From Octopus sinensis (Eukaryota), in assembly GCF_006345805.1 (NCBI RefSeq), contig NC_043023.1, positions 4,154,001 to 4,218,000 of the forward strand: a stretch of DNA of 64,000 bases, written 5' to 3'. Both the position numbers and the translations under genes were made by a program. Each line of letters opens with the position of its first letter. Positions within the stretch are counted from its first letter, which is position 1. The notes beneath the pieces are model-generated. The model was not told the origin of the DNA. It ran no database searches and saw nothing but the letters and a program-made list of their open reading frames with translations. Positions 366 to 45,462 of the stretch are shown here, piece after piece.

Positions 366-406
<41 letters not shown>

Positions 407-1187: not shown

Positions 1188-1229
<42 letters not shown>

Positions 1230-11263: not shown

Positions 11264-11303
<40 letters not shown>

Positions 11304-11405: not shown

Positions 11406-12521
11406 CACTTGCATACAAGGGCAGACACAAAGGTAAATTTGAGGGGTTTCTTGTGGATGTGGGATGGTTATGAAAAAAGAAAAAAAAAGGGTCAGAATGG
11501 TGTTCCATGGTGGTGGTGGTGGTGGTGGTGGTGGTGGTGGTGATGTGGAATGGTGGGCTTTTCCTCTTCAAAATAAAAACAAAAGTTGTATAAATAAATA
11601 AAAAATAATGATAGCCTTAATATATACATATATGAGTCTAGTTGATCAGTTAAGCAAAAAAATGAATATTGTATACATGTATGTATACATATATATACAT
11701 ATATATAAATATACACTTATACATATATTTATATATGTGTATACTTACACACATACACACACAAACACATACATATATAGATATATGAATGCACATGCAT
11801 GCATATATATATATATATGTACACACATTACACACTTATAAATTTATATATATATGCATACACACATGTATACATTTATATACATATATATACATATATA
11901 TATACATATATATATACATATATACATATATGTTGCGTTGAATGAAATGGCGAAAAAGAAATCAAAAGAAAAAAATTAATGATAAATGAAGAATTGCATT
12001 GAAAAAATTAATGTTAATTAATTATTGAATTATTTACTTAACTAATTAATTGATTGATAAGTGAATCTAACAACAGCATGAGAACATATGATGGAGAAAG
12101 AAGCTGTTATAGTCATGATGATTAACGAACAACCAACAGGAGGTCAAGAAATTTGGAATATTATTAATTATAATGAGATATAAGAAGAGGGAAATGAGAT
12201 GATAAGGAAAAGGAAATCAATATTGCCCCCACCACGACCACCACCACCAGCCTGGGATGGATGGGGATGAAAGGAGAAAAGAAATGAGATTAAAAACAAA
12301 GACATAGATATATTTGAGTGTATCTGTGTGTATACATATATAGATATATATATATACCTGTGTGTGTCTGTGTAGTATATATATACCTATTTATAATTAC
12401 ATATATATATACATTTTATATAGGTATATATATGTATATATAAATATATAGGTATATATACCTATATAGGTATATATATGTATATATAAATATATATATA
12501 GGTATATATATGTATATATAA

Positions 12522-12552
<31 letters not shown>

Positions 12553-12570
12553 ATATATAATATATATATG

Positions 12571-12653
<83 letters not shown>

Positions 12654-12698
12654 GGTAAATATACCTGTATATATACATATATGTAAATAGACATACAC

Positions 12699-12729
<31 letters not shown>

Positions 12730-12850
12730 ATATATATTTATTTATGTATGCGGTGGAGGTGTACCTCTATAGATGTGTACATTTATACATGCACATATAT
12801 TTTTTTGTGTGTGTGTGTATGTATATATATATATGTATGTATGCATGTAT
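10730..12850. repeat. Microsatellite cluster (TA, TG, CAT, GGT) downstream of the unc5 stop (probable 3' UTR/flank)
   Basis: Directly visible simple repeats. AATAAA hexamers at ~11572 and ~11594 are candidate polyadenylation signals. Confidence 0.85.
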
Positions 12851-21841: not shown

Positions 21842-22072
21842 AGGCGGCGAGCTGGCAGAAACGTTAGCACGCCGGGCGAAATGCGTAGCCGTATTTCGTC
21901 TGCCGCTACGTTCTGAGTTCAAATTCGGCCGAGGTCGACTTTGCCTTTCATCCTTTTGGGGTCGATAAAATAAGTACCAGTTATGCACTGGGGTCGATGT
22001 AATCGACTTAATCCGTTTGTCTGTCCTTGTTTGTCCCCTCTGTGTTTATCCCCTTGTGGGTAGTAAAGAAAT
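21842..22072 (+). mobile_element. SINE family C (GGCGGCGAGCTGGCAGAA head; CCTTTCATCCTTTCGGGGTCGATAAA..AAGTACCAG core)
   Basis: Near-identical copies at 9414-9720, 9897-10130, 17349-17572 and 45045-45462, with diverged copies at 15960-16440, 51720-52110 (-), 54540-54720 (-) and 55130-55350 (-). The core resembles the recalled Meta-SINE domain (inference). Confidence 0.8.
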
Positions 22073-22340: not shown

Positions 22341-22893
22341 TGTGTGTATGCATGTTTGTGAAGGTGCATGGCTTAGTGGCTAGGGTATTCAGGTCCTGAG
22401 TTCGAATCCTGGCATCACATTGTGTCCTTGAGCAAGAAACTTTATTTTACCAAGTTGTAGCTGTATTTCAAAAGAGCCAGCCTTGTCCCCTTCTGTGTCA
22501 TGCTGAATCTCCCTGGACTCAGAATGTAAAGAGCTACAAGAAATAGTAATAGTAATAGTATTACTATTATTAGTAATAGTAATAATAGCAAAAGTAATTT
22601 TTCAAAATAAACTGAAGTGATATATAAAGATATATTCAGTACATAAAAATGAGAAGTATCTACGTATCTATGTGTGTGTACTGGAAATTGAGATCAAGTG
22701 AGCTTTTTGCTCAACATGTAGTTTCCATCCACGCTGAGCTCATTTTGGTTTGCATGTTTGAGGAGTACTCAGCCAAACCCACAGGAAACAAAACCAATGC
22801 TTTTTATATGGCACCATCACCTGTGCCTTTTAAGTGGTACTATCACCAGTGCCTTTTTTTTAAGTGGCACCTTGGTTTTAGGATCTCAATTCT

Positions 22894-23820
22894 AGGGCCC
22901 AAGAAGCAATATCACATAACATACCGCTTCTGTTGCACTTCGGCGAATCTCATTTTCTGAGCCTCGTTTAAAATTTTTGTTAACAATACATTCTTTCTAG
23001 AATGTTTTATATTTGACCCATTTTTGCTTGTTTCGCTATACAATGTGAGCTTTCATATCCGATTTTTCCACACTCAAAACATTTACGATTTTTTAAAAGG
23101 ACAATTACTTCTAAAATGTAAACCTCCGCACATATATTGCAACTGCACCACACAAGCCAATAAATCTTCCATGTTTATGATTTTTTGCTTTAATTTTGTA
23201 CAAAAAAAAAAAACAAAATTTTTAACGTCCGACTTTTATACAATTTAGCGAAGCTGAGGTAAAATCAATGTTGTTCACACGACGTACTTCGCTAGACTCC
23301 AAAATGTACTTCTCTTTATTATTGCCACAAGGGCTCAACATAGAGGGGGGACAAACAAGAACAAACAGGACACCACAGAGGGGACAATACATAGAACGAA
23401 TATGAATGAAATGATTATGTAATAATGAAATTATGAAATGCAGTACCTTTAATTTTGTTTACAGTCCATTATTTAATAACAACCAATTAACATGTAACAT
23501 AACATTGCAAGTCGCTAATCCGTGTATTCTCCAGCGGCCCACATTGGATTCCTGACACATTGTCTTTCCAATAAAAACAGTCATATTACTCGCTATCCAT
23601 TGATTCAGGGCTATCTAAACGACAGACTGGTACTACCAGCGAAGAGTGGTCCCGGTGTGCGCACTCGCGCTAGCTAGTCGTAAGTAGTTGATCTACAACG
23701 ACTTCCGCTTGTGTTTGTATTTCAAGAAATTAATTAATATTTTTCGAACAAAGTAAATAAAACGCAAAGTAAATAATCTTTTAAACCAAGTAAATAAATT
23801 ATTTTTATAAACAAACTAAG
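22894..23820. repeat. Left arm of ~0.93 kb inverted repeat flanking the telomeric satellite
   Basis: Reverse complement of 38219-39139 along its whole length (AGGGCCCAAGAAGC...AAACAAACTAAG), with scattered substitutions. Confidence 0.97.
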
Positions 23821-26800
23821 GTTAGGGTTAAAAAATTAGGTCTAGGGTTAGGGTTAGGGTTAAAAAATTAGGTCTAGGGTTAGGGTTAGGGTTAAAAAAT
23901 TAGGTCTAGGGTTAGGGTTAGGGTTAAAGAATTAGGTCTAGGGTTAGGGTAAGGGCTAAAAAATTAGGTCTAGGGTGGTTAGGGTTAAAAAATTAGGTCT
24001 AGGGTTAGGGTTAGGGTTAAAAAATTAGGTCTAGGGTTAGGGCTAGGGTTAAAAAATTGGGTCTAGGGTTAGGGTTAGGGTTAAAAAATTAGGTCTAGGG
24101 TTAGGGTTAGGGTTAAAAAATTAGGTCTAGGGTTAGGGTTACGGTTAAAAAATTAGGTCTAGGGTTAGGGTTAGGGTTAAAAAATTAATTCTAGGGTTAG
24201 GGTTACGGTTAAAAAATTAGGTCTAGGAATAGGGTTAAAAAATTAGGTCTAGGGTTAGGGTTAGGGTTAAAAAATTGAGTCTAGGGTTAGGGTTAGGGTT
24301 AAAAAATTAGGTCTAGGGTTAGGGTTAGGGTTAAAAAATTAGGTCTAAGGTTAGTGTTAGGGTTAAAAAATTAGTGTTAGGGTTAAAAAATTAGGGTTAG
24401 GGTTAGGGTTAAAAAATTAGGTCTAGGGTTACGGTTAGGGTTAAAAAATTAGGTCTAGGGTTAGGGTTAGGGTTAAAAAATTAGGTCTAGGGTTAGGGTT
24501 AGGGTTAAAAAATTAGGTCTAGGGTAAGGGTTAGGGTTAAAAAATTAGGTCTAGGGTTAGGGTTAGGGTTAAAAAATTAGGTCTAGAGTTAGGGTTAGGG
24601 TTAAAAAATTAGGTCTAGGGTTAGGGTTAGGGTTAAAAAATTAGGTCTAGGGTTAGGGTTAAAAATTAGGTCTAGGGTTAGGGTTAGGGTTAAAAAATCA
24701 GGTCATGGGTTAGGGTTAGGGTTAAAAAATTAGGTCTAGGGTTAAAAAATTTTTAACCTAACCCTAGACCTAATTTTTTAACCCTAACCCTAACCCTAGA
24801 CCTAATTTTTGAACCCTAACCCTAACCCTAGACCTAATTTTTTAACCCTAACCCTAACCCTAGAGATAATTGTTTAACCCTAACCCTAACCCTAGACCTA
24901 ATTTTTTAACCCAAACCTTAACCCTAGACCTAATTTTTTCAACCTAACCCTAACCCTGGACCTAATTTTTTAACCCTAACCCTAACCCTAGACCAATTCT
25001 TTTAAACCTAACCCTAACCCTAGACCTAATTTTTTAACACTAAACCTAGACCTAATTTTTTAACTGTAACCCCAACCGTAGACCTAATTTTTCAACCCTT
25101 ACACTAACCCTAGACCTAATTTTTGAACCCTAACCCAAACCCTAGACCTAATTTTTTAACGCTAACCCTAACCCTAGACCTAATTTTTTAACCCTAACCC
25201 TAACCCTAGACCTAATTTTTAACCCTAACCCTAACCCTAGACCTAATTTTTTAACCCTAACCTTAACCCTAGTCCTAATTTTTTAACCCTAGAGCTAATT
25301 TTTTAAACCTAACCCTAACCCGAGACCTAATTTTTTAGCCCTAGCCCTAACACTAGAGATAATTTTTTAACCCTAACCCTAACCCTAACCATAGACCTAA
25401 ATTTTTAACCCTAACCCTAACAATAGAGATAATTTTTTAACCCTAACCCTAACCCTAGACCTAATTTTTTAAACCTAACCCTAGAGATAATTTTTTAACA
25501 GAACCGTAGACCTAATTTTTTAACCCTAACCCTAACCTTAGACGTAATTTTTTAACCCTAACCCTAGAGATAATATTTTAACCCTAACCCTAAACCTAGA
25601 CCTAATTTTTGAACCCTAACCCTAACCCTAGAGATAATTTTTTAACCCTAACCCTAACCCTAGACCTAATTTTTTAACCCTAACGCTAAACCTACACTTA
25701 ATTTTTTAACCCTAACCCTAACCCTAGACCTAATTTTATAACCCTAACCCAAAACCTAATTTTTTAACCCTAACCCTAGACCTAATTTTTTAAACCTAAC
25801 CCTAACCATAGACCTGAATTTTTAACCCAAACCCTAACCCTAGACCTAATTTTTTAACCCTAACCCTAATCCTAGACCTAATTTTTTAACCGTAACCCTA
25901 ACCCTAGACCTAATTTTTTGACCCTAACCCTAACCCTAGAGATATTTTTTTAACCCTAACCCTAAACCTAGACCTAATTTTTTGACCCAAACCTTAACCC
26001 TAGACCTAATTTTTTAACCCTAACCCTAACCATAGACCTAATTTTTTAACCCTAACCCTAGACCTAATTTTTTAACCCTAACCCTAACCCTAGAGATAAT
26101 TTTTTAACCCTAACCCTAACCCTAGACCAATTCTTTTAACCCTAACCCTAACCCTAGACCTAATTTTTTAACCCTAAACCTAACCCTAGACCTAATTTTT
26201 TAACCCTAACCCCAACCCTAGACCTAATTTTTTAACCCTTACCCTAAACATAGACCTAATTTTTTAACCCTAAACCTAACCCTAGACCTAATTTTTTAAC
26301 CCTAACCCTAACCCTACACCTAATTTTGTAACCCTAACCCTAACCCTACACCTAATTTTTTAACCCTAACCCTAACCCTAGACCTAATTTTTTAACCCTA
26401 ACCTTAACGCTACACCTAATTTTTTAACCCTAACCCTAACCCTAGACCAAATTTTTTAAACCTAACCCTAACCCGAGACCTAATTTTTTAGCCCTAACTC
26501 GAACCCTAGACCTAATTTTTTACCCTAACCCTAACCCTAGACCTTTTTTAAACCTAACCCTAACCCTAGACCAATTTTTTAACCCTAACCCTAAACCTAG
26601 ACCTAATATTTTAAACCCAACCCTAACCCTAGACCTAAATTTTTAACCCTAACCCTAACCCTAGACCTAATTTTTTAACCCTAACCCTAAACCTAGACCT
26701 AATTTTTTAACCCTAACCCTAACCCTAGACCTAATTTTTTAACCCTAACCCTAACCCTAGAGATAATTTTTTAACCCTAACCCTAACCCTAGACCTAATT

Positions 26801-29800
26801 TTTTAACCCAAATTTTAAACCTAGACCTAATTTTTTAACCCTAACCCTAACCCTAGACCTAATTTATTAACCCTAACCCTAACCCTAGAGATAATTTTTT
26901 AACCCTAACCCTAACCCTAACCCTAACCACCCAACCCAACCCAACCCAACCGCCAACCCTAACCCTACCCTAACACTAACCCTAACCCAACCCAACCTAA
27001 CCCTAACCCTAAACCTAACCCAACCCAACCTGACCTAAACCTAACCCTAACCCTAACACTAACCCAACCCTACCCAACCCTAATTCAACCCTAACCCAAC
27101 CCTAACCCTAACCCTAACCCTAACCCTAATTATCTCTAGTGTTAGGGTTAGGGTTAAAAAATTAATTCTAGGGTTAGGGTTAGGGTTAAAAAATTAGGTC
27201 TAGGGATAGGGTTAAAAAATTAGGTCTAGGGTTAGGGTTAGGGTTACACAATTAGGTCTAGAGTTAGGGTTAGGGTTAAAAAATTAGGTATAGGGTAAGG
27301 GTTAGGGTTAAAAAATTAGGTCTAGGGTTAGGGTTAGGGTTAAAAAATTAGGTCTAGAGTTAGGGTTAGGGTTAAAAAATTAGGTCTAGGGTTAGGTTTA
27401 GGGTTAGGGTTAAAAATTAGGTCTAGGGTTAGGGTTAGGTTTAAAAAATCAGGTCTAGGGTTAGGGTTAGGGTTAAAAAATTAGGTCTAGGTTTAGGGTT
27501 AAAAAATTAGGTCTAGGGTTAAAAAATTTTTAAGCCTAACCCTAGACCTAATTGTTTAACCCTAACCCTAACCCTAGACCTAATTTTTTAACCCTAACCC
27601 TAAACGTAGAGATAATTTTTAAACCTAACCCTAACACTAGACCTAATTTTTTAACCCTAACCCTAATTTTTTTACCCTAACCCTAACCCTAGAGATAATT
27701 TTTTAACCCTAAACCTAACCCTACCACTAACCCTAACCCTAACCCTAACCCAACCCAACGCTAACACTAACCCTAACCCTAACCATAACCATAACCCTAA
27801 CTCAACCCTAACCCTAACCCTAACCCTAACCCTAACCCTAACACTAACCCTAACCCTAGCCCTAACCCTAACCCTAACCCTAACCCTAATCCTAACCCTA
27901 ATTATCTCTAGGGTTAGGGTTAGGGTTAAAAAATTAGGTCTAGGGATAGGGTTAAAAAATTAGGTCTAGGGTTAGGGTTAGGGTTAAAAAATTAGGTCTA
28001 GGGTTAGGGTTAGGGTTAAATAATTAGGTCTAGGGTTAGGGTTAGAGTTAGGGTTAAAAATTTAGGTCTAAGGTTAGGGTTAGGGTTAAAAAATTAGGTC
28101 TAGGGTTACGGTTAGGGTTAAAAAATTAGGTCTAGGTTAGGGTTAAAGAATTAGGTCTAGGGTTAGGGTTAGGGTTAAAAAATTAGGTCTAGGGTAAGGG
28201 TTAGGGTTAAAAAATTAGATCTAGGGTTAGGGTTAGGGTTAAAAAATTAGGTCTAGAGTTAGGGTTAGGGTTAAAAAATTAGGTCTAGTGTTAGTTAGGT
28301 TAAAAAATTAGGTCTAGGGTTAGGGTTAGGGTTAGGGTAAAATTAGGTCTAGGGTTAGGGTTAGGGTTAAAAAATTAGGTCTATGGTTAGGGTTAAAAAC
28401 TTAGGTCTACGGTTAAAAAATTTTTAAGCCTAAACCTAGACCTAATTTTTTAACCCTAACCCTAACCCTAGACCTAATTTTTTAACCCTAACCCTAACCC
28501 TAGAGATAATTTTTTAACCCTAACCCTAACCCTAGACCAATTCTTTTAACCCTAACCCTAACCCTAGACCTAATTTTTTACCCTAAACCTAACCTAGACC
28601 TAATTTTTTAACCCTAACCCCAACCCTAGACCTAATTTTTTAACCTTACCCTAAACCTAGACCTATTTTTTTAACCCTAAACCTAACCCTAGACCTAATT
28701 TTTTAACCCTAACCCTAACCTACACCTAATTTTGTAACCCTAACCCTAACCCTACACCTAATTTTTTAACCCTAACCCTAAACCTAGACCTAATTTTTTA
28801 ACCCTAACCTTAACGCTACACCTAATTTTTTAACCCTAACCCTAACCCTAGACCAAATTTTTTAAACCTAACCCTAACCCGAGACCTAATTTTTTAGCCC
28901 TAACTCGAACCCTAGACCTAATTTTTTAACCCTAACCCTAGACCTAATTTTTTAACCCTAACCCTAACCCTAGACCAAATTTTTTAACCCTAACCCTAAA
29001 CCTAGACCTAATATTTTAAACCCAACCCTAACCCTAGACCTAAATTTTTAACCCTAACCCTAACCCTAGACCTAATTTTTTAACCCTAACCCTAAACCTA
29101 GACCTAATTTTTTAACCCTAACCCTAACCCTAGACCTAATTTTTTAACCCTAACCCTAACCCTAGAGATAATTTTTTAACCCTAACCCTAACCCTAGACC
29201 TAATTTTTTAACCCAAATTTTAACCCTAGACCTAATTTTTTAACCCTAACCCTAACCCTAGACCTAATTTATTAACCCTAACCCTAACCCTAGAGATAAT
29301 TTTTTAACCCTAACCCTAACCCTAACCCTAACCCAACCCAACCCCAACCCAACCCAACCCAACCCTAACCCTAACCCTAACACTAACCCTAACCCAACCA
29401 ACCCTAACCCTAACCCTAAACCTAACCCAACCCAACCCTGACCCTAACCCTAACCCTAACCCTAACACTAACCCAACCCTAACCCAACCCTAATTCAACC
29501 CTAACCCAACCCTAACCCTAACCCTAACCCTAACCCTAATTATCTCTAGTGTTAGGGTTAGGGTTAAAAAATTAATTCTAGGGTTAGGGTTAGGGTTAAA
29601 AAATTAGGTCTAGGGATAGGGTTAAAAAATTAGGTCTAGGGTTAGGGTTAGGGTTACACAATTAGGTCTAGAGTTAGGGTTAGGGTTAAAAAATTAGGTC
29701 TAGGCTAAGGGTTAGGGTTAAAAAATTAGGTCTAGGTTAGGGTTAGGGTTAAAAATTAGGTCTAGAGTTAGGGTTAGGTTAAAAAATTAGGTCTAGGGTT

Positions 29801-32800
29801 AGGTTAGGGTTAGGGTTAAAAAATTAGTTAGGGTGGGTTAGTTTTAAAAAATCAGGTCTAGGGTTAGGTTAGGGTTAAAAATTAGGTCTAGGTTTAGGGT
29901 TAAAAAATTAGGTCTAGGGTTAAAAAATTTTTAAGCCTAACCCTAGACCTAATTGTTTAACCCTAACCCTAACCCTAGACCTAATTTTTTAACCCTAACC
30001 CTAAACGTAGAGATAATTTTTAAACCTAACCCTAACACTAGACCTAATTTTTTAACCCTAACCCTAACCCTAACCCTAATTTTTTTACCCTAACCCTAAC
30101 CCTAGAGATAATTTTTTAACCCTAACTAACCTACACTAACCCTAACCCTAACCCTAAAACCTAAACCCAACCCAACGCAACACTAACCCTAAACCTAACC
30201 AAACCATATAAACCCTCACCCAACCCAACCCTAACCCTAACCCTAACCCTCCTACCCTAACCCTAACACTAACCCTAACCCTAGCCCTAACCCGAACCCT
30301 AACCTAACCCTAATCCTACCCTAATTATCTCTAGGTTTGGGTAGGGTAGGGTTAGGGTTAAAAAATTAGGTCTAGGGATAGGGTTAAAAAATTAGGTCTA
30401 GGTTAGGGTTGGGTTAAAAAATTAGGTCTAGGGTTAGGGTTAGGGTTAAATAATTAGGTCTAGGGTTAGGGTTAGAGTTAGGGTTAAAAATTTAGGTCTA
30501 AGGTTAGGGTTAGGGTTAAAAAATTAGGTCTAGGGTTACGGTTAGGGTTAAAAAATTAGGTCTAGGTTAGGGTTAAAGAATTAGGTCTAGGGTTAGGGTT
30601 AGGGTTAAAAAATTAGGTCTAGGGTAAGGGTTAGGGTTAAAAAATTAGATCTAGGGTTAGGGTTAGGGTTAAAAAATTAGGTCTAGAGTTAGGGTTAGGG
30701 TTAAAAAATTAGGTCTAGTGTTAGGGTTAGGGTTAAAAAATTAGGTCTAGGGTTAGGGTTAGGGTTAGGGTTAAAATTAGGTCTAGGGTTAGGGTTAGGG
30801 TTAAAAAATTAGGTCTATGGTTAGGGTTAAAAACTTAGGTCTACGGTTAAAAAATTTTTAAGCCTAAACCTAGACCTAATTTTTTAACCCTAACCCTAAC
30901 CCTAGACCTAATTTTTTAACCCTAACCCTAAACCTAGAGATAATTTTTTAACCCTAACACTAACCCTAGACCTAATTTTTTAACCCAAACCTTAAACCTA
31001 GACCTAATTTTTTAACCCTAACCCTAACCCTAGACCTAATTCTTTAAACCTAAACCTAACCCTAGAGATAATTTTTTAACCCTAACCCTAACCCTAACCC
31101 TAACCCTAACCCTAACCCAACCCTAACCCAACCCCAACCCTACCCCAAACCCAACCCCACCTCCAACCCTATCCCTAACCCTAACCCTAACCCTAACCCT
31201 AACCCTAAACCTAACCCAACCCTAACCCAACCCAACCCAACCCTAACCCAACCCAACCCTAACCCAACCCAACCCTAACCCTAACCTTAACCCTAACCCT
31301 AACCCTAACCCTAATTATCTCTAGGGTTACGGTTAGGGTAAAAAAATTAATTCTAGGGTTAGGGTTAGGGTTAAAAAATTAGGTCTAGGGATAGGGTTAA
31401 AAAATTAGGTCTAGGGTTAGGGTTAGGGTTAAAAAATTAGGTCTAGGGTTAGGGTTAGGTTTAAAAAATTAGGTCTAGGGTTAGGGTTAGGGTTAAAAAA
31501 TTAGGTCTAGGGTTAGGGTTAGGGTTAAAAAATTGGGTCTAGGGTTATGGTTAGGGTTAAAAAAGTAGGTCTAGGGTTAGGATTAGGGTTAAAGAATTGG
31601 GTCTAGGGTTAGGGTTAGGGTTAAAAAATTAGGTCTAGTGTTAGGGTTAGGGTTAGGGTAAAAAAATTAGGTCTAAGGTTAGGGTTAGGGTTAAAAAATT
31701 AGGGTTAGGGTTAGGGTTAAAAAATTAGGTGTAGGGTTAGGGTTAGGGTTAAAAAATTAGGTCTAGGGTTAGGGTTAGGGTTAAAAAATTAGGTCTAGGT
31801 TTAGGGTTAGGGTTAAAAAATTAGGTCTCGGGTAAGAGTTAGGGTTAAAAAATTAGGTCTAGGGTTAGGGTTAGGGTTAAAAAATTAGGTCTAGAGTTAG
31901 GGTTAGGGTTAAAAAATTAGGTCTAGGGTTAGGGTTAGTGTTAAAAAATTAGGTCTAGGGTTAGGGTTAGGGTTAGGGTTAAAAATTAGGTCTACGTTTA
32001 GGGTTAGGGTTAAAAAATCAGGTCTAGGGTTAGGGTTAGGGTAAAAAAATTAGGTCTAGGGTTAGGTTTAAAAAATTAGGGTTAGGGTTAGGGTTAAAAA
32101 ATTAGGTCTAGGGTTACGGTTAGGGTTAAAAAATTAGGTCTAGGGTTAGGGTTAGGGTTAAAAAATTTTTAAGCCTAAACCTAGACCTAATTGTTTAACC
32201 CTAACCCTAACCCTAGACCTAATTTTTTAACCCTAACCCTAGAGATAATTTTTTAAACCTAACCCTAACACTAGACCTAATTTTTTAACCCTAACCCTAA
32301 CCCTAACCCTAACCCTAACCCTAATTTTTTAACCCTAACCCTAACCATATAGATAATTTTTTAACCCTAACCCTAACCCTAACCCTAACCCTAACCCTAA
32401 CCCAACCCAACCCTAACCCTAACCCTAACCTAACCCTAACCCAACCCTAACCCTAACCCTAACCCTAACCCTAACCCTAACCCTAACATTAACACTAACC
32501 CTAACCACAACCCTAGCCCTAACCCTAACCCTAACCCTAACCCTAACCCTAACCCTAACCCTAATTATCTCTAGGGTTAGGGTTAGGGTTAAAAAATTAG
32601 GTCTAGGGATAGGGTTAAAAAATTAGGTCTAGGGTTAGGGTTAGGGTTAAAAAATTTGGTCTAGGTTTAGGGTTAGCGTTAAATAATTAGGTCTAGGCTT
32701 AGGGTTAGGGTTAGGGTTAAAAAATTAGGTCTAAGGTTAGGGTTAGGGTTAAAAAATTAGGTCTAGGGTTACGGTTAGGGTTAAAAAATTAGGTCTAGGG

Positions 32801-35800
32801 TTAGGGTTAGGGTTAAAAAATTAGGTCTAGGGTTAGGGTTAGGGTTAAAAAATTAGGTCTAGGGTAAGGGTTAGGGTTAAAAAATTAGGTCTAGGGATAG
32901 GTTTAGGGTTAAAAAATTAGGTCTAGGGTTAGGGTTAGGGTTAAAAAATTAGGTCTAGAGTTAGGGTTAGGGTTAAAAAATTAGGTCTAGGGTTAGGGAT
33001 AGGGTTAAAAAATTAGGTCTAGGGTTAGGGTTAGGGTTAGGGTTAAAAATTAGGTCTAGGGTTAGGGTTAGGGTTAAAAAATCAGGTCTAGGGTTAGGGC
33101 TAGGGTTAAAAAATTAGGTCTAGGTTTAGGGTTAAAAAATTAGTGTTAGGGTTAGGGTTAAAAAATTAGGTCTAGGGTTACGGTTAGGTTTAAAAATTAG
33201 GTCTAGGGTTAGGTTAGGGTTAAAAAATTAGGTCTAGGGTTAGTTTAGGGTTAAAAAATTAGGTCTAGGTTTAAAAATTTTTAAGCCTAAGCCTAGACCT
33301 AATTATTTAACCCGAACCCTAACCCTAGACCTAATTATTTAACCTAACCCTAACCCTAGAACTAATTTTTTAACCCTAACCCTAACCCTAGAGATAATTT
33401 TTTAACCCTAACCCTAACACTAGACCTAATTTTTTAACCCTAACCCTAACCCTAATTTTTTAACCCTAACCCTAACCCTAGAGATAATTTTTTAACCCTC
33501 ACCCTAACCCTTACCCTAAACCTAACCCTAACCCTAACCCTAACCCAACCCAACCCTAACCCTAACCCTAACCCTAACCCTAACCCTAACCCAACCCTAA
33601 CCCTAACCCTACCCTAACCCTAACCCTAACCCTAACACTAACACTAACCCTACCCTAACCCTAGCCTAACCCTAACCCTAACCCTAACCCTAATTATCTC
33701 TAGGGTTAGGGTTAGGGTTAAAAAATTAGGTCTAGGGATAGGGTTAAAAAATTAGGTCTAGGGTTAGGGTTAGGGTTAAATAATTAGGTCTAGGATAGGG
33801 TTAAAAAATTAGGTTAGGGTTAGGGTTAGGTTAGGGTTAGGGTTAAAAATTAGGTCTAGGGTTAGGGTTAGGGTTAAATAATTAGGGTTAGGGTTAGGGG
33901 TAGGTTAGGGTTAGGGTTAAAAATTAGGTCTAGGTTAGGGTTAGGGTTAAATAATTAGGTCTAGGGTTAGTGTTAGGGTTAGGGTTAAAAAATTAGGTCT
34001 AAGGTTAGGGTTAGGGTTAAAAATTAGGTCTATAGTTACGGTTAGGTTTAAAAATTAGGTCTAGGGTTAGGGTTAGGGTTAAAAAATTAGGTCTAGGTTA
34101 GGGTTAGGGTTAAAAAATTAGGTCTAGGATTACGGTTAGGGTTAAAAAATTAGGTCTAGGGTTAGGGTTAGGGTTACACAATTAGGTCTAGAGTTAGGGT
34201 TAGGGTAAAAAATTAGGTCTAGGGTAAGGGTTAGGGTTAAAAATTAGGTCTAGGGTTAGGGTTAGGGTTAAAAAATTAGGTCTAGAGTTAGGGTTAGGGT
34301 TAAAAAATTAGGTCTAGGTTAGGGTTAGGTTAAAAAGTTAGTCTAGGGTTAGGGTTAAAAACTTAGGTCTAGGGTCAAAAAATTTTTAAGCCTATCCCTA
34401 GACCTAATTTTTTAACCCTAACCCTAACCCTAGAGATAATTTTTTAACCCTAACCCTAGAGATAATTTTTTAACCCTAACCCTAACCTAGACCTAATTTT
34501 TTAACCCTAACCCTAACCCTAACCCTAAACCTAACCCTTACCCACCCAACACAACCCTAACCCTAACCCTAACCCTAACCCTAACCCAACCCCTAACCCT
34601 AACCCTAACCCTAACACTAACCCTAACCCTAATTATCTCTAGGGTTAGGGTTAGGGTTAAAAAATTAATTCTAGGGTTAGGGTTAGGGTTAAAAAATTAG
34701 GTCTAGGGTTAGGGTTAGGGTTAGGGTTAAAAATTAGGTCTAGGGTTAGGGTTAGGGTTAAAAAATCAGGTCTAGGGTTAGGGCTAGGGTTAAAAAATTA
34801 GGTCTAGGTTTAGGGTTAAAAAATTAGTGTTAGGGTTAGGGTTAAAAAATTAGGTCTAGGGTTACGGTTAGGGTTAAAAAATTAGGTCTAGGGTTAGGGT
34901 TAGGGTTAAAAAATTAGGTCTAGGGTTAGGGTTAGGGTTAAAAAATTAGGTCTAGGTTTAAAAATTTTTAAGCCTAAGCCTAGACCTAATTATTTAACCC
35001 GAACCCTAACCCTAGACCTAATTATTTAACCCTAACCCTAACCCTAGAACTAATTTTTTAACCCTAATCCTAACCCTAGAGATAATTTTTTAACCCTAAC
35101 CCTAACACTAGACCTAATTTTTTAACCCTAACCCTAACCCTAATTTTTTAACCCTAACCCTAACCCTAGAGATAATTTTTTAACCCTCACCCTAACCCTT
35201 ACCCTAAACCTAACCCTAACCCTAACCCTAACCCAACCCAACCCTAACCCTAACCCTAACCCTAACCCTAACCCAACCCTAACCCTAACCCTAACCCTAA
35301 CACTAACACTAACCCTAACCCTAACCCTAGCCCTAACCCTAACCCTAACCCTAACCCTAATTATCTCTAGGGTTAGGGTTAGGGTTAAAAAATTAGGTCT
35401 AGGGCTAGGGTTAAAAAATTAGGTCTAGGGTTAGGGTTAGGGTTAAATAATTAGGTCTAGGGATAGGGTTAAAAAATTAGGGTTAGGGTTAGGGTTAGGG
35501 TTAGGGTTAGGGTTAAAAAATTAGGTCTAGGGTTAGGGTTAGGGTTAAATAATTAGGGTTAGGGTTAGGGTTAGGGTTAGGGTTAAAAAATTAGGTCTAG
35601 GGTTAGGGTTAGGGTTAAATAATTAGGTCTAGGGTTAGTGTTAGGGTTAGGGTTAAAAAATTAGGTCTAAGGTTAGGGTTAGGGTTAAAAAATTAGGTCT
35701 ATAGTTACGGTTAGGGTTAAAAAATTAGGTCTAGGGTTAGGGTTAGGGTTAAAAAATTAGGTCTAGGGTTAGGGTTAGGGTTAAAAAATTAGGTCTAGGG

Positions 35801-38222
35801 TTACGGTTAGGGTTAAAAAATTAGGTCTAGGGTTAGGGTTAGGGTTACACAATTAGGTCTAGAGTTAGGGTTAGGGTTAAAAAATTAGGTCTAGGGTAAG
35901 GGTTAGGGTTAAAAAATTAGGTCTAGGGTTAGGGTTAGGGTTAAAAAATTAGGTCTAGAGTTAGGGTTAGGGTTAAAAAATTAGGTCTAGGGTTAGGGTT
36001 AGGGTTAAAAAATTAGGTCTAGGGTTAGGGTTAAAAACTTAGGTCTAGGGTCAAAAAATTTTTAAGCCTATCCCTAGACCTAATTTTTTAACCCTACCCT
36101 AACCCTAGAGATAATTTTTTAACCCTAACCCTAACCCTAGACCTAATTTTTTAACCCTAACCCTAACCCTAACCCTAAACCTAACCCTTACCCAACCCAA
36201 CACAACCCTAACCCTAACCCTAACCCTAACCCTAACCCAACCCCTAACCCTAACCCTAACCCTAACCCTAACCCTAACACTAACCCTAACCCTAATTATC
36301 TCTAGGGTTAGGGTTAGGGTTAAAAAATTAATTCTAGGGTTAGGGTTAGGGTTAAAAAATTAGGTCTAGGGATAGGGTTAAAAATTAAGGTCTAGGGTTA
36401 GGGTTAGGGTTAAAAAATTGGGTCTAGGGTTAGGGTTAGGGTTAAAAAATTAGGTCTAGTGTTAGGGTTAGGGTTAAAAAATTAGGTCTAAGGTTAGGGT
36501 TAGGTTTTAAAAATTAGGGTTAGGGTTAGGGTGAGAAAATTAGATCTAGGGTTACGGTTAGGGTTAAAAAATTAGGTCTAGGGTTAGGGTTAGGGTTAAA
36601 AAATTAGGTCTAGGGTAACGGTTAGGGTTAAAAAATTAGGTCTAGGGTTAGGGTGAGGGTTAAAAAATTAAGTCTAGAGTTAGGGTTAGGGTTAAAAAAT
36701 TAGGTCTAGGGTTAGGGTTAGGGTTAAAAAATTAAGTCTAGGGTTAGGGTTAGGGTTAGGGTTAAAAATTAGGTCTAGTGTTAGGGTTAGGGTTAAAAAA
36801 TCAGGTCTAGGGTTAGGGTTAGGGTTAAAAAATCAGGTCAAGGGTTAGGGTTAAAAAATTATGTCTAGGGTTAAAAAATTTTAAAGCCTAACCCTAGACC
36901 TAATTTTTTAACCCTAACCCTAACCCTAGACCTAATTTTTTAACCCTAACCCTAACTCTAGACCTAATTTTTTAACCCTAACCCTAACCCTAGACCTAAT
37001 TTTTTAACCCTAACCCTAATCCTAGACCTAATTTTTTAACCCTAACCCTAACCCTAGATCTAATTTTTTAACCCTAACCCCTTACCCTAGACCTAATTTT
37101 TTAACCCTAACCCTGACCCTAGACCTAATTTTTTAACCCTAACCCTAACCCTAGACCTAATTTTGTAGCCCTAACCCTAACCCAAGACCTTATTTTTTTA
37201 ACCCTAACCCTAGACCTTATTTTTTAACCCTAACCCTAGACCTAATTTTTTAACCCTAACCTAACCCTAGACCTAATTTTTTAACCCTAACCCTAACCCT
37301 AGACCTAATTTTTTCGACCCTAACCCTAACCCTAGACCTAATTTTTTAACCCTAACCCTAACCCTAGACCTAATTTTTTAACCCTTACCCTAACCCTAGA
37401 CCTATTTTTTTTAACCTAACCGTAACCCTAGACCTAATTTTTTAACCCTAACCCTAACACTAGACCTAATTTTTTAACCCTAACCCTCCCTAGACCTATT
37501 TTTTAACCCTAACCCTAACCCTAGACCTAATTTTTTAACCCTAACCCTAACCCTGACCTAATTTTTTAACCTAACCCTAACCCTAGACCTAATTTTTTAA
37601 CCCTAACCCTAATCCTAGACCTAATTTTTTAACCCTAACCCTAACCCTAGAACTAATTTTTTTTACCCTAACCCTTACCCTAGACCTAATTTTTTTGCCC
37701 TAACCCTAACCCTAGACCTAATTTTTTAACCCTAATCCTAACCGTAGACCTTATTTTTTAACCCTAACCCTAACCCTAGACCTAATTTTTTAACCCTAAC
37801 CCTAACCCTAGACCTAATTTTTTAACCCTAACCCTAACCCTAGACCTAATTTTTTAACCCTAACCCTAACCCTTGACCTAATTTTTTAACCCTAACCCTA
37901 ACCCTAGACCTAATTTTTTAACCCTAACCCTAACCCTAGACCTAATTTTTTAACCCTAACCCTAACCCTAGACCTAATTTTTTAACCCTAACCCTAACCC
38001 TAGACCTAATTTTTTAACCCTAACCCTAACCCTAGACCTAATTTTTTAAGTCTAACCCTAACCCTAGACCTAATTTTTTAACCCTAACCCTAACCCTAGA
38101 CCTAATTTTTTAACCCTAACCGTAATCCTAGACGTAATTTTTTAACCCTAACACTAACCCTAGACCTAATTTTTTTTTACCCTAACCCCTACCCTAGACC
38201 TAATTATTTAACCCTAACCTTA
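23818..38222. repeat. Telomere-derived (TTAGGG) satellite array with alternating orientation (interstitial telomeric-like sequence)
   Basis: Unit GGTCTA(GGGTTA)2-3 AAAAATTA (26 or 32 bp). 11 G-strand and 11 C-strand blocks, with embedded near-pure (CCCTAA)n tracts. Confidence 0.97.
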
Positions 38223-39139
38223 GTTTGTTTATAAAAATAATTTATTTACTTGGTTTAAAAGATTTTTTACTTTGCGTTTTATTTACTTTGTTCGAAAAAT
38301 ATTAATTAATTTCTTGAAATACAAACACAAGCGGAAGTCGTTGTAGGATCAACTACTTACGACTAGCTAGCGCGAATGCGCGCGCCGGGACCACTCTTCG
38401 CTGGTAGTACCAGACTGTCGTTTAGATAGCCCTGAATCAATGGATAGCGAGTAATAAAACTGTTTTTATTGGAAAGACAACGTGTCAGGAATCCGATGTG
38501 GGCCGCTGGAGAATAACACGGATTAGCGACTTGCAATGTTATGTTACATGTTAATTGGTTTTTTAAATAATGGACTGTAAACAAAATTAAAGGTACTGCA
38601 TTTCATTTCATTATTACATAATCATTTCATTCATATTCGTTCTATGTATTGTCCCCTCTGTGGTGTCCTGTTTGCTTGTTTGTCCCCCCTCTATGTTGAG
38701 CCCTTGTGGCAATAATAAAGAGAAGGGCATTTTGGAGTCTAGCGAAGTACGTCGTGTGAACAACATTGATTTTACCTCAGCTTCGCTAAATTGTATAAAA
38801 GTCGGACGTTAAAAATTTTGTTGTTTTTTTTTGTACAAAATCAAAGCAAAAAATCATAAACATGGAAGATTTATTGGCTTGTGTGCTGCAGTTGCAATAT
38901 ATGTGCAGAGGTTTACATTTTAGAAGTAATTGTCCTTTTAAAAATCGTAAATGTTTTGAGTGTGGAAAAATCGGATATGAAAGCTCACATCGTATAGCGA
39001 AACAAGCAAAAACGGGTCAAATACAAAACATTCTAGAAAGAATGTATTGTTAACAAAAATTTTAAACGAGGCTCAGAAAATGAGATTCGCCGAAGTGCAA
39101 CAGAAGCGGTATGTTATGTGATATTGCTTCTTGGGCCCT
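38219..39139. repeat. Right arm of ~0.93 kb inverted repeat flanking the telomeric satellite
   Basis: Reverse complement of 22894-23820. Confidence 0.97.
38862..39053 (+). pseudogene. Degenerate gag twin zinc-knuckle fragment (Ty3/Gypsy-like), mirrored in the left arm
   Basis: ORF contains CRGLHFRSNCPFKNRKCFECGKIGYESSH, resembling the CxxCGxxH..C-x-F-K..CxxCxKxGH..C double knuckle of Mag/Gypsy-type gag. Confidence 0.6.
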
Positions 39140-42004: not shown

Positions 42005-42345
42005 TAGTGCGTAGGAGGGGTTTGGACGTGTGTATGTATAGGGTTGGTGTATGTATTAGTATGTATTAGTATGTATAAGGGTGTGTGTGTGTGTGTGTGT
42101 ATGAGAGAGTATTAGTGCGTAGGATTGGTCTGGACGTGCGTATGTATGGGGTTGGTGTATGTATTAGTATGTATTAGTATGTATTAGTACGTATTGGTAT
42201 GTATAAGTGTGTGTGTGTGTGTATGAGAGAGTATAAGTGCGTATGCGGGGTCTGGACGTGTGTATGTATAGGGTTGGTGTATGTATTAGTATGTACTAGT
42301 ATGTATTAGTACGTATTAGTATGTATTAGTTGGTGTGTGTATTAG
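42005..42345. repeat. Three tandem ~110-120-bp units in the Penelope 3' region
   Basis: TAGTGCGTAGGA...TGGACGTG.GTATGTAT.GGGTTGGTGTATGTATTAGTATG... starts at ~42005, ~42114 and ~42235. Confidence 0.85.
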
Positions 42346-43739
42346 TATGGCACATCATATGTGATGTGATGTGTAAAGTCATGTGGTGTAGTGAGAAGAG
42401 GGGGAGGGGAAGAAGAGGGGGAGGGGGAGGAGGGGGATGAAGGAGGAAAGAGGGAGAGGGGGAGAGAGAAGGGGAGTGAGGGAGCAGAGGGAAGGGGAAG
42501 AGGGAGGGAGAAAGAGGGAAGAAGGGAAGGGGAGTAGGGGTGAAAGGATGAAGGACTGAAGAAGTAGGGGTCGGGGGGAAAGGATAGGTGAGGAGGGGGA
42601 GAGAGTTGAGACCAAATGGCGTATAAGAGCGAAGAGAGAAGATTAATTCCTGTTCACGGCGCAAACGGGAATCCGGATGGCCTCTGTGTAAGAACAAACC
42701 GAACACAGATAGGTGTTGCAAGGAGTGACCGGTGGAGCGGAAATGGCGTGAGACCGGTGTGTCGTTCGCAAGGTGGATGTCACGAAGGTGTTCCGCGAAC
42801 CGGTCAGCCAAGCGGCGTCCCGTTTGTCCGATGTACAAGGAATTGCAGAGAGAGCAAGAGATGCAATAGATAATATTGCTGGAGGTGCAGGTGAAGGAGT
42901 GGATGATGGGATAGGGTCGATGGTGGGTGCTAGTGAGGCGGGTGGTGTTGGAGAGGTAAGGGCAAGTGCGGCAACGTGGGCGGGTGCAGGGGAACGAGCC
43001 GGGTTGGGAGGTAGGGTCAGGGAAGGAGCTATGGACCAAAAGGTCTCGAAGGTTGTGGGCTCGTTTGAAAGAGGGGAGGGGTCGGTTAGGGAAGAGGTGT
43101 GAAGTGGACGGGTCGGACTGGAGATGACGGAAAGCTCGAAGAATGGTGCGTTGGAGACGTAGGGTCGTGGGGTGGTAAGTGAGGGGAAAATGGAGGCGGG
43201 AGACTACAGGGCGGGTTCGGGGAGAGAGAGCAGATACACGGTCCACGGACCGTGCTCTGGCAAGGGCGGTGTGGATAGTGGTGAGGGGGTATCCACGTAG
43301 GGTGAAGTGGTGAGCCATACGTTGAGACTGAGTCTCAAAGTCATGGTCGTCACTACAGAGCCTACGTAGACGGAGGAATTGGGAATAGGGGATGGAAAGC
43401 TTGGTGTGTTCTGGGTGGGAGGAAGAGAAGTTGAGGTATGAGTGTGAGTTTGTGTGTTTGTAGTGAATGGAGGTGGTAAGAGTGGAGTGAAGAATGCTAA
43501 CCGAAATGTCGAGGAAGGAGACAGAGGTGTTGGAGATAGTGGAAGTGAAGTGGAGGGCTGGATGGAAAGATTGGACGAAAGAGAGGAAGGAATCTAGATG
43601 TTCGCGGGAGAGTGAGGTGGCACCGATAATGTCGTCAATGTAACGACCATATAGTTCAGGAGTGGGACTACGCACACACAAACACACATTAAACAGTATA
43701 ATTATTTTAAAAACATTAATTCAGATTACAACTTCATAT

Positions 43740-45042: not shown

Positions 45043-45462
45043 ACGTCATACATTTCGTCTGCTACGTTCTGAGTTCAAATTCTGCCGAAGTCGACTTTGC
45101 CTTTCATCCTTTCGGGGTCGATAAATTAAGTACCAGTTACGCACTGGGGTCGATGTAATCGACTTAATCCCTTTGTCTGTCCTTGTTTGTCCTCTCTGTG
45201 TTTAGCTCCTTGTGGGTAGTAAAGAAATTGGATTTTGTTTGCCGCTAAGTTCTGAGTTCAAATTCCGCCGAGGTCGACTTTGCCTTTCATCCTTTCGGGG
45301 TCGATAAATTAAGTACCAGTTATGCACTGGGGTCAATATAATCGACTTAATCCGTTTGTCTGTCCTTGTTTGTCCCCTCTGTGCTTAGCCCCTTGTGGGT
45401 AGTAAAGAAATAGGATTTTGTCTGCCGCTAAGTTCTGAGTTCAATTTCCGCCGAGGTCGACT

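What the first reader, a model, noticed from the sequence alone, without database searches (positions are those of the whole stretch)
23818..38222. 14-kb telomere-derived satellite that flips orientation 21 times at only two junction sequences
Seen: a 26/32-bp unit GGTCTA(GGGTTA)2-3AAAAATTA forms 11 G-strand blocks (starting ~23818, 27130, 27901, 29541, 30325, 31315, 32565, 33694, 34633, 35362, 36297) alternating with 11 C-strand blocks. All 11 G-to-C switches are the fold-back GGT(T/C)AAAAA(A)TTTT(T)AA(G)CC, formed through the unit's own A/T tract. All 10 C-to-G switches use the same core, CCCTAATTATCTCTAG. Ordinary interstitial telomeric sequences are one orientation or a single head-to-head fusion. 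Inference: the amplified unit is a whole palindromic cassette [G-block, A/T fold-back, C-block, telomere tract], tandemly copied with constant polarity. That is what rolling-circle (t-circle-like) or repeated fold-back/re-replication would give, i.e. a self-propagating telomere-mimic repeat system.
Basis: partly seen in the sequence, partly recalled or inferred. Interest (0 to 1): 0.85.

Follow-up and report, generated by a model that had tools for sequence, protein, structure and literature searches.

The report
Flip-flopping transposon-borne telomere-like repeat array
A 14.4-kb block of 32-bp telomere-like repeats in an octopus chromosome really does reverse direction 21 times, but it grew from the internal repeat of a small transposon (MITE) at one locus, with two founder inversion joints later copied by local tandem duplication, so it is not a self-propagating telomere mimic.

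Summary
Window 23820-38219 holds 22 strictly alternating blocks (11 G-strand, 11 C-strand) of a 32-bp unit. All 11 G-to-C switches lie in a palindrome through the unit's A/T tract. All 10 C-to-G switches carry CCCTAATTATCTCTAG.

The unit is the internal repeat of a dispersed ~300-bp MITE with ~75-bp terminal inverted repeats and 9-bp target duplications. Other copies carry 1 to 59 units, always in one orientation.

In the 2.72-Gb assembly (statistics match Octopus sinensis), both junction sequences and the exact unit variant occur only at this interstitial locus.

Junction flanks share private variants in pairs. Multi-cassette segments are duplicated at offsets of 2410 bp (95.5% identity), 1684 bp (95.7%) and 1128 bp (86%). 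So each junction type arose once and was spread by repeated local tandem duplication.

The array sits inside a 926-bp inverted duplication (97% identity) that reaches 735 bp beyond the MITE.

Both junction types fall on the unit's palindromic AATT, which points to fold-back or template-switch replication errors. There is no support for rolling circles, a telomere fusion or a mobile system. Raw reads could not be checked.

The parts
22894..23819 (+). Left arm of the 926-bp inverted duplication of non-satellite DNA. It is a mosaic: 52 bp unique, then two unrelated interspersed-repeat fragments (about 22946-23304 and 23313-23625), then a mirrored MITE right half (TIR_R plus AT-rich loop, 23628-23819).
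   Evidence: 97.0% identical over 939 aligned bp to the reverse complement of 38209-39139. The full 926 bp occurs only at these two places in the genome, while its sub-parts match separate repeats. The MITE TIR core is at 23645 on the + strand.
23820..38219 (.). The 14.4-kb array: 22 alternating blocks that form 11 cassettes [G arm | A/T palindrome | C arm (| hexamer tract)]. Cassette bounds: 23820-27131, 27132-27903, 27904-29541, 29542-30326, 30327-31316, 31317-32566, 32567-33695, 33696-34634, 34635-35362, 35363-36297, 36298-38219.
   Evidence: Unit 6-mers cover 93% of the array. There is no foreign DNA and no MITE TIR or loop inside it.
24744..24756 (.). First of 11 G-to-C junctions, an uninterrupted palindrome through the unit's A/T tract centred on AATT. 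The A-runs of the others start at 27521, 28415, 29922, 30849, 32160, 33273, 34377, 34960, 36053 and 36873.
   Evidence: Genome-wide, the 32-nt junction probe (up to 3 mismatches) hits only 10 sites, all in this array. The generic fold-back motif hits only this locus.
27124..27139 (+). First of 10 C-to-G junctions, CCCTAATTATCTCTAG. The others start at 27896, 29534, 30319, 31309, 32559, 33688, 34627, 35355 and 36290.
   Evidence: One search gives exactly 10 on the + strand and 0 on the - strand. The 30-nt junction probe (up to 2 mismatches) gives 9 hits in 2.72 Gb, all here and all on the + strand.
26897..27131 (+). Example of the degenerate CCCTAA/CCCAA tract (235 bp) that precedes each C-to-G junction; the ten tracts measure 136-284 bp. 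In 7 of 10 cassettes the tract starts right after a ...CCCTAGAGATAATT unit and ends at AATTATCTCTAGGG..., so it sits in the loop of a short interrupted palindrome.
   Evidence: Mirror identity across the tract is 0.94-1.0 over 32 bp in six of the ten cassettes (0.77-0.88 in the other four), 0.89-0.95 over 64 bp in six of ten, and at background by 224 bp. The longest perfect hexamer run is 8.
26047..31081 (+). Youngest large tandem duplication: 26047-28645 matches 28457-31081 (offset 2410 bp, 95.5% over 2657 bp). Each copy spans two cassettes (type A plus type B).
   Evidence: Junction-flank identity matrices group 27133/29543/31318 as type A and 27905/30330/32568 as type B.
32954..36168 (+). 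Second tandem duplication: 32954-34487 matches 34638-36168 (offset 1684 bp, 95.7%). An older one is 31442-33418 against 32570-34517 (offset 1128 bp, 86%).
38220..39139 (-). Right arm of the inverted duplication. The MITE loop and TIR_R (38220-38411) are in the native orientation relative to the C-strand array, followed by 735 bp of flanking mosaic sequence.
   Evidence: The TIR core is at 38385 on the - strand and the loop motif at 38223 on the + strand. No target-site duplication is seen at the outer IR ends.

Best explanation
This is a locus-specific minisatellite that grew from the internal telomere-like repeat of a MITE and was then rearranged.

1. A ~300-bp MITE family has ~75-bp TIRs starting GGTACTACTAGCG and 9-bp target duplications. 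Between its left TIR and its AT-rich loop it carries TTTTT(AACCCT)n. In many copies this has become a 26/32-bp tandem unit (shown).
2. At this locus the unit expanded in the C-strand orientation next to the MITE loop and right TIR (shown for the right end).
3. Replication or repair errors created two inversion junctions, both on the unit's palindromic AATT (junction sequences shown; mechanism inferred). The G-to-C junction is a zero-spacer fold-back through the A/T tract. The C-to-G junction is an interrupted palindrome whose one-unit loop later grew, by hexamer slippage, into the degenerate CCCTAA tract.
4. One inversion event also copied the MITE right half plus 735 bp of flank in reverse to the far side of the array, and the MITE's left TIR was lost (structure shown; order of events inferred).
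5. The [G|C] cassette was then multiplied by repeated unequal exchange or slippage between same-orientation blocks. This gave a higher-order repeat with two cassette types in the order A B A B A B B A B A and carried the two junctions along (shown).

No function is indicated. The locus looks like a neutral product of genome instability.
For: - Single origin of each junction. Both junction probes hit only this array in 2.72 Gb, always on the same strand. The generic fold-back motif also hits only here.
- Local duplication. Junction flanks cluster pairwise at 0.92-0.97 identity. Tandem duplicates lie at offsets of 2410, 1684 and 1128 bp with 95.5%, 95.7% and 86% identity.
- MITE origin. At least 1174 first-look candidates are spread across chromosomes, and 9-bp TSDs are seen in L015, L021, L022, L027 and L034. 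The internal TTTTT(AACCCT)1-3 segment is polymorphic among copies. An intact MITE carries 15 units (L053) and another array has 59 units (L054), both in one orientation. The 28-nt unit-boundary probe gives 479 genome hits, of which 341 are in the window and 138 are elsewhere.
- Continuity with the MITE. Both array ends run into the MITE loop and TIR_R.
- Inverted duplication of 926 bp at 97% identity, with no TSD at its outer ends.
- Hexamer slippage is general in this repeat. Units differ by whole hexamers, and TTAGGG runs occur inside a G block at 35477 and 35553.
- The structure is old rather than a fresh palindrome. Mirror identity at G-to-C junctions is 0.67-0.87, no better than the cross-junction control of 0.805 +/- 0.033.
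- The locus is interstitial, at 4.18 Mb of a 21.3-Mb scaffold.
- Inverted amplification with junctions at short interrupted inverted repeats is an established replication-error product (PMC4689423).
Against: - No raw reads were available, so cassette number and order rest on a single assembly.
- The mirror symmetry expected of a fold-back is no longer detectable at the G-to-C junctions. At the C-to-G junction it extends only about 32-64 bp.
- The ATCTCTA linker variant occurs in the internal C blocks but never inside G blocks or in the outermost C block. A simple model in which G blocks mirror C blocks does not explain this, so later homogenisation within each orientation has to be invoked.
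- The bracketing AGAGATA unit counts as one ancestral observation. That unit type makes up about 16% of internal C-block units, so on its own it is weak evidence.
- The block count is even and one flank is inverted. This is not the plain 2n+1 inverted triplication of the ODIRA model.
Confidence: 0.7

Rival explanations
1. Assembly artefact. Fold-back chimeric long reads, or mis-joined repeat or haplotype copies, created the alternating structure or inflated the number of cassettes.
For: The genome statistics match a PacBio plus Hi-C assembly. A 14-kb array of 32-bp units is hard to assemble. No reads could be examined.
Against: A chimeric read gives near-perfect mirror arms at arbitrary positions. 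Here the arms are no more alike than controls (0.67-0.87), and all junctions fall at two stereotyped sequences. Cassette copies differ by 3-24% and carry structured private variants. The non-satellite inverted arms differ by 3% with indels. There are no gaps.
Confidence: 0.1
2. A circular palindromic cassette (t-circle-like) was amplified by rolling-circle replication or by repeated fold-back and re-replication, giving a self-propagating telomere-mimic repeat.
For: Cassette polarity is constant and the junctions are identical. The units contain three TTAGGG hexamers, and TTAGGG is the reported octopod telomere repeat (PMC6160780). ODIRA-type models do involve an extrachromosomal inverted dimer.
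Against: Only one locus exists in 2.72 Gb. Cassette lengths range from 728 to 3312 bp. The duplications have different periods (2410, 1684, 1128 bp) and different ages (95.7% to 86% identity), and cassette types A and B alternate. That is iterative local duplication, not one burst of equal copies. The unit descends from a MITE, not from a telomere.
Confidence: 0.05
3. Breakage-fusion-bridge cycles with telomerase healing. On the minus strand the C-to-G junction reads CCCTAGAGATAA followed by (TTAGGG)n. On this view that is de novo telomere addition at a break inside a unit, and the G-to-C junctions are sister-chromatid fusions.
For: The junction is sharp and has hexamers in the polarity that telomerase would add. 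The tract is purest next to the junction.
Against: The locus is interstitial with unique DNA on both sides. The tract lies in register within one repeat unit, is bracketed by a short inverted repeat, and ends in a normal unit A/T tract. It is degenerate, with CCCAA variants and runs of at most 8 hexamers. Whole-hexamer slippage is common throughout this repeat family. This rival concerns only the origin of one junction. It does not challenge the MITE origin or the tandem-duplication history.
Confidence: 0.1
4. The whole 16-kb structure (926-bp arms plus repeat-filled interior) is a Foldback-type transposon, or a pile of nested MITE insertions.
For: Long inverted termini with tandem repeats running inward resemble Drosophila FB elements (from general knowledge). 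The MITE family is abundant.
Against: The 926-bp arm exists only at this locus and is a mosaic of unique DNA plus three unrelated repeat fragments. There is no TSD at the outer ends. TIR and loop motifs occur only once on each side and never inside the array.
Confidence: 0.03

Closest known systems
Tandem-repeat-containing MITEs and MITE-derived satellites (for example oyster HindIII satDNA, bivalve BIV160, Xenopus Xstir, insect MITEs with hitchhiking microsatellites; table in PMC6947457)
   Same: A short internal repeat of a non-autonomous DNA transposon varies in copy number among dispersed copies (1 to 59 units here) and expands into a long array at particular loci. The same MITE's TIR region has also formed a 228-bp x 8.4 array elsewhere.
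   Different: Here the repeat unit is built from the host telomere hexamer. The largest array has lost one TIR, lies inside an inverted duplication of flanking DNA, and alternates orientation 21 times. No orientation switching was found in the other arrays of this family.
Inverted amplification by replication template switching: ODIRA, tandem inverted duplication, DUP-TRP/INV-DUP (PMC4689423, PMC10766183, PMC10766186)
   Same: Segments alternate between forward and inverted. [quoted passage not shown] The locus is interstitial and distal DNA is retained.
   Different: The block count is even and one flank is inverted, rather than a 2n+1 amplicon between native flanks. Most copies came from later tandem duplication of an already inverted cassette. 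Neither an origin of replication nor an extrachromosomal intermediate can be tested. This is an old germ-line structure inside a minisatellite, not a selected gene amplification.
Interstitial telomeric sequences, including Arabidopsis ITR domains made of mosaic satellites that expand in situ into higher-order structures (bioRxiv 10.64898/2026.05.10.723265)
   Same: Telomere-motif DNA lies far from chromosome ends, arose in cis from another repeat class rather than from a telomere fossil, and grew by block duplication into a higher-order repeat.
   Different: The source repeat is a MITE rather than a centromeric satellite. The array is 14 kb rather than megabases, occupies a single locus, and flips orientation.
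Head-to-head telomere fusion relic (human 2q13 type; from general knowledge)
   Same: G-strand and C-strand telomere-like repeats meet head to head.
   Different: Here the head-to-head switch lies in the unit's A/T tract, not between hexamer tracts. The hexamer tract sits at the opposite (C-to-G) switch. The two flanks are inverted copies of the same sequence rather than two subtelomeres.

Membership tests
Tandem-repeat-containing MITE / MITE-derived satellite | The family has terminal inverted repeats and target-site duplications and is dispersed in many copies | tested here: met
   ~75-bp TIRs. 9-bp TSDs in L015, L021, L022, L027 and L034. At least 1174 first-look candidates across chromosomes.
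Tandem-repeat-containing MITE / MITE-derived satellite | The same repeat unit occurs inside dispersed family members with variable copy number | tested here: met
   TTTTT(AACCCT)1-3 in 33 copies. 15 units in an intact MITE (L053), 59 units in L054 and 1-2 units in L055-L058. 138 unit-boundary hits outside the window.
Tandem-repeat-containing MITE / MITE-derived satellite | The array at this locus is contiguous with MITE sequence in the family's register | tested here: met
   The right end reads ...AACCCTAACCTTAGTTTGTTTATAAAAA, then loop and TIR_R exactly as in canonical copies. The left end is its mirror image. TIR_L is absent.
Higher-order repeat formed by local tandem duplication | Multi-unit segments repeat in tandem with higher identity than neighbouring cassettes show to each other | tested here: met
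   Offsets of 2410 bp (95.5%) and 1684 bp (95.7%), against 76-90% between unrelated cassettes.
ODIRA / tandem inverted duplication | [quoted passage not shown] | tested here: met
   G-to-C junction: palindrome centred on AATT. C-to-G junction: CCCTAGAGATAATT ... AATTATCTCTAGGG bracketing a one-unit loop.
ODIRA / tandem inverted duplication | Odd copy number (2n+1) with the central copy inverted and both native flanks retained | tested here: not met
   22 blocks. The left flank is an inverted copy of the right flank over 926 bp.
ODIRA / tandem inverted duplication | The amplicon contains a replication origin and passes through an extrachromosomal inverted dimer | not testable with these tools
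   Needs replication mapping or circle assays.
Rolling-circle / t-circle amplification | Copies of uniform period with star-like (equal) divergence | tested here: not met
   Cassettes of 728-3312 bp. Three duplication periods and identities from 86 to 96%.
Rolling-circle / t-circle amplification | Propagation to other loci or telomeres | tested here: not met
   No junction or exact-unit hits outside this locus in 2.72 Gb.
Telomere-telomere fusion ITS | A (TTAGGG)n-(CCCTAA)n head-to-head junction flanked by two different subtelomeres | tested here: not met
   The head-to-head switch is in the A/T tract of 32-mers. The hexamer tract is at the tail-to-tail switch. The flanks are mirror copies of each other.
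Foldback-type transposon | Multiple genomic copies that share long repeat-filled TIRs and have target-site duplications | tested here: not met
   The 926-bp arm occurs only here. No TSD. The arms are a mosaic of unrelated repeats.

The most novel reading that the evidence does not exclude
The locus may be a germ-line record, in an animal, of ODIRA-like inverted amplification seeded by a 4-bp palindrome inside a transposon-borne telomere-like minisatellite. Because it alternates orientation, any transcript through it would fold into long hairpins carrying both TTAGGG and CCCTAA strands. It could therefore act as a source of small RNAs against telomeric transcripts or against the MITE family. 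A related open point is that the MITE family itself carries host telomere hexamers directly inside one TIR, which could reflect an unrecognised link between this transposon and telomerase or telomere-binding proteins.
Probability: 0.1. Interest if true: 0.6.

Novelty: new variant of a known kind. Interest (0 to 1): 0.4.

Why it matters
- It gives a fully resolved natural example of how a transposon's internal microrepeat becomes a complex satellite. The steps are seed, unidirectional arrays at several loci, and one locus where two inversion joints on a 4-bp palindrome were then multiplied as a higher-order repeat.
- It shows that interstitial telomere-like DNA in an animal can arise in cis from a mobile element rather than from chromosome fusion. 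That matters when interstitial TTAGGG signals are read as evidence of karyotype evolution.
- It also serves as a caution. Twenty-one stereotyped orientation switches need only two founding events plus ordinary tandem duplication.
- No function or phenotype is indicated.

Tried and rejected
- **Fresh palindrome or read chimera.** Mirror identity across each G-to-C junction is no better than cross-junction controls, so this was rejected.
- **Nested MITE insertions.** TIR and loop motifs occur only in the two outer arms and the array holds no foreign DNA (a first fuzzy-regex version timed out), so this was rejected.
- **Mobile Foldback-like element.** The 926-bp arm is unique to this locus and mosaic, and its outer ends have no TSD, so this was rejected.
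- **Continuation of the inverted repeat beyond 22894/39139.** Only dispersed repeats and microsatellites match there. The last ~95 bp of the left flank is the end of a very abundant repeat with a 26-bp tail. This did not show which arm is the original.
- **Genome-wide satellite family.** The exact unit is confined to this locus. A looser probe found related units in other MITE copies.
- **Coding content.** No ORF lies in the array. The gag-like CCHC stretch in the inverted arm has 6 stops.
- **Literature.** Searches for a described octopus or cephalopod telomere-like satellite or interstitial telomeric repeat found nothing specific.
- **Not attempted.** Read-level validation and comparison with other octopus genomes, because no tool gives access to them.
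Full report
**Observation**

TRF reports a 32-bp unit (consensus AATTAGGTCTAGGGTTAGGGTTAGGGTTAAAA) across 23820-38219, on alternating strands.

K-mer mapping gives exactly 22 blocks, 11 G-strand and 11 C-strand, and almost no such k-mers elsewhere in the 64-kb window. The 11 G-to-C switches are all palindromes through the unit's A/T tract, typically GGTTAAAAAATTTTTAAGCC.

The 16-mer CCCTAATTATCTCTAG occurs 10 times, only on the + strand and only at the C-to-G switches. A 46-nt unit probe has 172 matches in the window and none in shuffled sequence.

The window contains no Ns. The 'telomere tract' before each C-to-G switch is 136-284 bp of degenerate CCCTAA/CCCAA, with no perfect run longer than 8 hexamers.

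**Where it is**

The window is C27:4154001-4218000 of a 2,719,151,902-bp assembly in 13,516 sequences. C27 is 21.3 Mb, so the array is interstitial, 4.18 Mb from the scaffold start.

The scaffold number, total size and N50 (C10 = 105.89 Mb) equal those tabulated for the chromosome-scale Octopus sinensis assembly in PMC10700109. Octopod telomeres are reported to be (TTAGGG)n (PMC6160780).

**The junctions arose once each**

- The 30-nt C-to-G junction (up to 2 mismatches) has 9 hits in the whole genome, all in this array and all on the + strand.
- The 32-nt G-to-C junction (up to 3 mismatches) has 10 hits, all here.
- A generic fold-back motif through the A/T tract also hits only this locus.

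Sequences flanking the junctions share private variants in pairs. Identity matrices sort the C-to-G junctions into two cassette types. Type A is 27133, 29543 and 31318, with 34636 and 36299 as looser members. Type B is 27905, 30330 and 32568, plus the pair 33697 and 35364. Their order along the array is A B A B A B B A B A.

Self-alignment shows staggered tandem duplications:
- 26047-28645 matches 28457-31081 (offset 2410 bp, 95.5%).
- 32954-34487 matches 34638-36168 (offset 1684 bp, 95.7%).
- 31442-33418 matches 32570-34517 (offset 1128 bp, 86%).
- The first cassette matches the last in direct orientation (88%).

Cassette lengths range from 728 to 3312 bp. This is a higher-order repeat built by several rounds of local duplication of different ages. 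The 21 switches therefore need only two founding junctions.

**The unit comes from a MITE, not from a telomere**

The 192 bp next to each end of the array (23628-23819, and in reverse 38220-38411) match a dispersed family of ~300-bp elements. The family has ~75-bp terminal inverted repeats starting GGTACTACTAGCG and 9-bp target-site duplications, for example AACTATTCC, AACAAATCA, TCAGATTGA, TTCTTTCAG and CACCATTGC. It has at least 1174 first-look candidates across chromosomes.

The canonical layout is TIR_L, then TTTTT(AACCCT)n, then AACCTTAG, then an AT-rich loop, then TIR_R. The hexamer number varies from 1 to 3 or more among 33 copies examined.

A 28-nt probe across the unit boundary gives 479 genome hits. 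Of these, 341 are in the window and 138 lie elsewhere, mostly with the variant CCCTAAACC. Those other sites are MITE copies that carry the same 26/32-bp repeat exactly between TIR_L and the loop:
- L053 is an intact MITE with 15 units.
- L054 is a 1.9-kb array of 59 units.
- L055-L058 carry 1-2 units.

In every one of these copies the units run in a single orientation.

The exact unit variant of this window (CCCTAGACC) is confined to this locus. The 46-nt probe gives 172 hits in the genome, and the same 172 are in the window. The same MITE's TIR has also produced a 228-bp x 8.4 tandem array on C18. Expansion of MITE-internal repeats into satellites is well documented, including in bivalve molluscs (PMC6947457).

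**The array lies inside an inverted duplication**

Region 22894-23819 is 97% identical to the reverse complement of 38220-39139. These 926 bp comprise 52 bp of unique DNA, fragments of two unrelated interspersed repeats, and the MITE loop plus TIR_R.

Both ends of the array therefore carry the MITE's right half in mirror orientation, and TIR_L is missing. The complete 926-bp arm exists nowhere else in the genome, and there is no target duplication at its outer ends.

This is a segmental inverted duplication that reaches 735 bp beyond the MITE. It is not a transposon terminus. The outermost G block resembles the reverse complement of the outermost C block at about 92%.

**How the junctions probably formed (inferred)**

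Both junction types sit on the palindromic AATT of the unit:
- G-to-C reads ...GGGTTAAAAAATT followed by TTTTAACCC....
- C-to-G reads ...CCCTAATT followed by ATCTCTAGGG....

AATTATCTCTAGGG is the mirror of a unit variant (CCCTAGAGATAATT) that is common in the internal C blocks, with 22 copies on the + strand. In G orientation it occurs only at the 10 junctions.

In 7 of 10 cassettes the hexamer tract begins directly after such a CCCTAGAGATAATT unit. The tract therefore occupies the loop of a short interrupted palindrome. Mirror identity across it is 0.94-1.0 over 32 bp in six of the ten cassettes (0.77-0.88 in the rest) and 0.89-0.95 over 64 bp in six of ten.

[quoted passage not shown] Whole-hexamer slippage is frequent throughout this repeat family. 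It can account for the loop unit growing into a degenerate 136-284-bp tract.

The fit is imperfect in four ways:
- The G-to-C arms are no longer mirror images (0.67-0.87 against a control of 0.805 +/- 0.033).
- The ATCTCTA variant is absent from G blocks and from the outermost C block.
- The block count is even.
- One flank is inverted.

**Rivals**

*Assembly artefact.* This cannot be excluded without reads. However, chimeric fold-back reads would give near-perfect mirror arms at arbitrary positions. Here the arms are diverged, the junctions are stereotyped, cassette copies differ by 3-24% in a structured way, and the unique arms differ by 3%.

*Rolling-circle or self-propagating model.* The single locus, the unequal cassettes and the nested ages of the duplications argue against it.

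*Telomerase healing at the C-to-G junction.* The sequence allows it, since the minus strand reads CCCTAGAGATAA followed by TTAGGG.... It is disfavoured because the locus is interstitial, and because the tract is degenerate, lies in register within one unit, and is bracketed by an inverted pair.

*Foldback-type transposon or nested MITE insertions.* Both are rejected.

**Verdict**

It resolves into known processes: a transposon-borne minisatellite, one or two inversion-type replication errors on a 4-bp palindrome, and ordinary higher-order tandem duplication, all at a single locus.

It is a new variant of known kinds. Two points remain of moderate interest. One is the telomere-hexamer content of a MITE's internal repeat. 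The other is the unusually clean record of inverted amplification followed by higher-order duplication. No function is indicated.

Noticed in passing
window 42326-43687 (- strand): A 453-aa open frame with a weak GIY-YIG endonuclease match (E 0.0026, 18.5 bits, below Pfam's cut-off) and a motif like ...LYIGQTGRRLADRFAEH.... It is probably the C-terminal part of a Penelope-like retroelement. It lies 4 kb from the array, and no link to the array was found.
   Followed up: partly
L050:740-2642 (G000 C18:7196040-7197940): A 228-bp x 8.4 tandem array (97% matches) whose unit starts with the same MITE's TIR. This is a second, independent case of tandem amplification in this MITE family.
   Followed up: partly
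L054:850-2730 (G000 C29:11.067 Mb): A 1.9-kb one-orientation array of 59 units of a sister 32-mer (TTTTTTAACCCTAACCCTAATCCTAAACCTAA) that starts at a MITE left TIR. It is interrupted by an unrelated ~120-bp insert, and its far end is not the MITE loop.
   Followed up: partly
MITE family copies, e.g. L010:1404-1707, L053, L056: The MITE carries host telomere hexamers, TTTTT(AACCCT)1-3, immediately inside one TIR only. Why a DNA transposon derivative holds telomere repeats there is unexplained. The superfamily was not determined; the 9-bp TSD is compatible with Mutator- or Merlin-like elements (from general knowledge).
   Followed up: no
window 38843-39112 and mirrored in 22921-23190: A CCHC zinc-knuckle-like (gag-like) remnant inside the inverted arms. 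The frame has 6 stops. It belongs to an interspersed repeat with many copies at 86-88% identity (for example L011, L012).
   Followed up: partly
window 45061-45463; also 21893-22072 and 17407-17572: A 183-bp x 2.2 tandem of a SINE-like element (GCTAAGTTCTGAGTTCAAATTCCGCCGAGG...) with further copies in the window.
   Followed up: no
G000 C8:40878847-40886784: An ~8-kb array of a 26-bp repeat related to the tail ACCAGTGCCTTTTAAATGGCACCATC at window 22793-22857. The same tail ends exactly at the left breakpoint (22893) of the inverted duplication.
   Followed up: no
window 369-1824, 10802-11295, 12331-12749: Very long (TA)n microsatellites (up to 1.4 kb) and many shorter TA/TG tracts. Local GC falls to 13-18% in the first 2 kb.
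   Followed up: no
window 35477-35512 and 35553-35582: Runs of 6 and 5 perfect TTAGGG inside a G block. This shows that hexamer expansion is not restricted to the tracts at the C-to-G junctions.
   Followed up: yes
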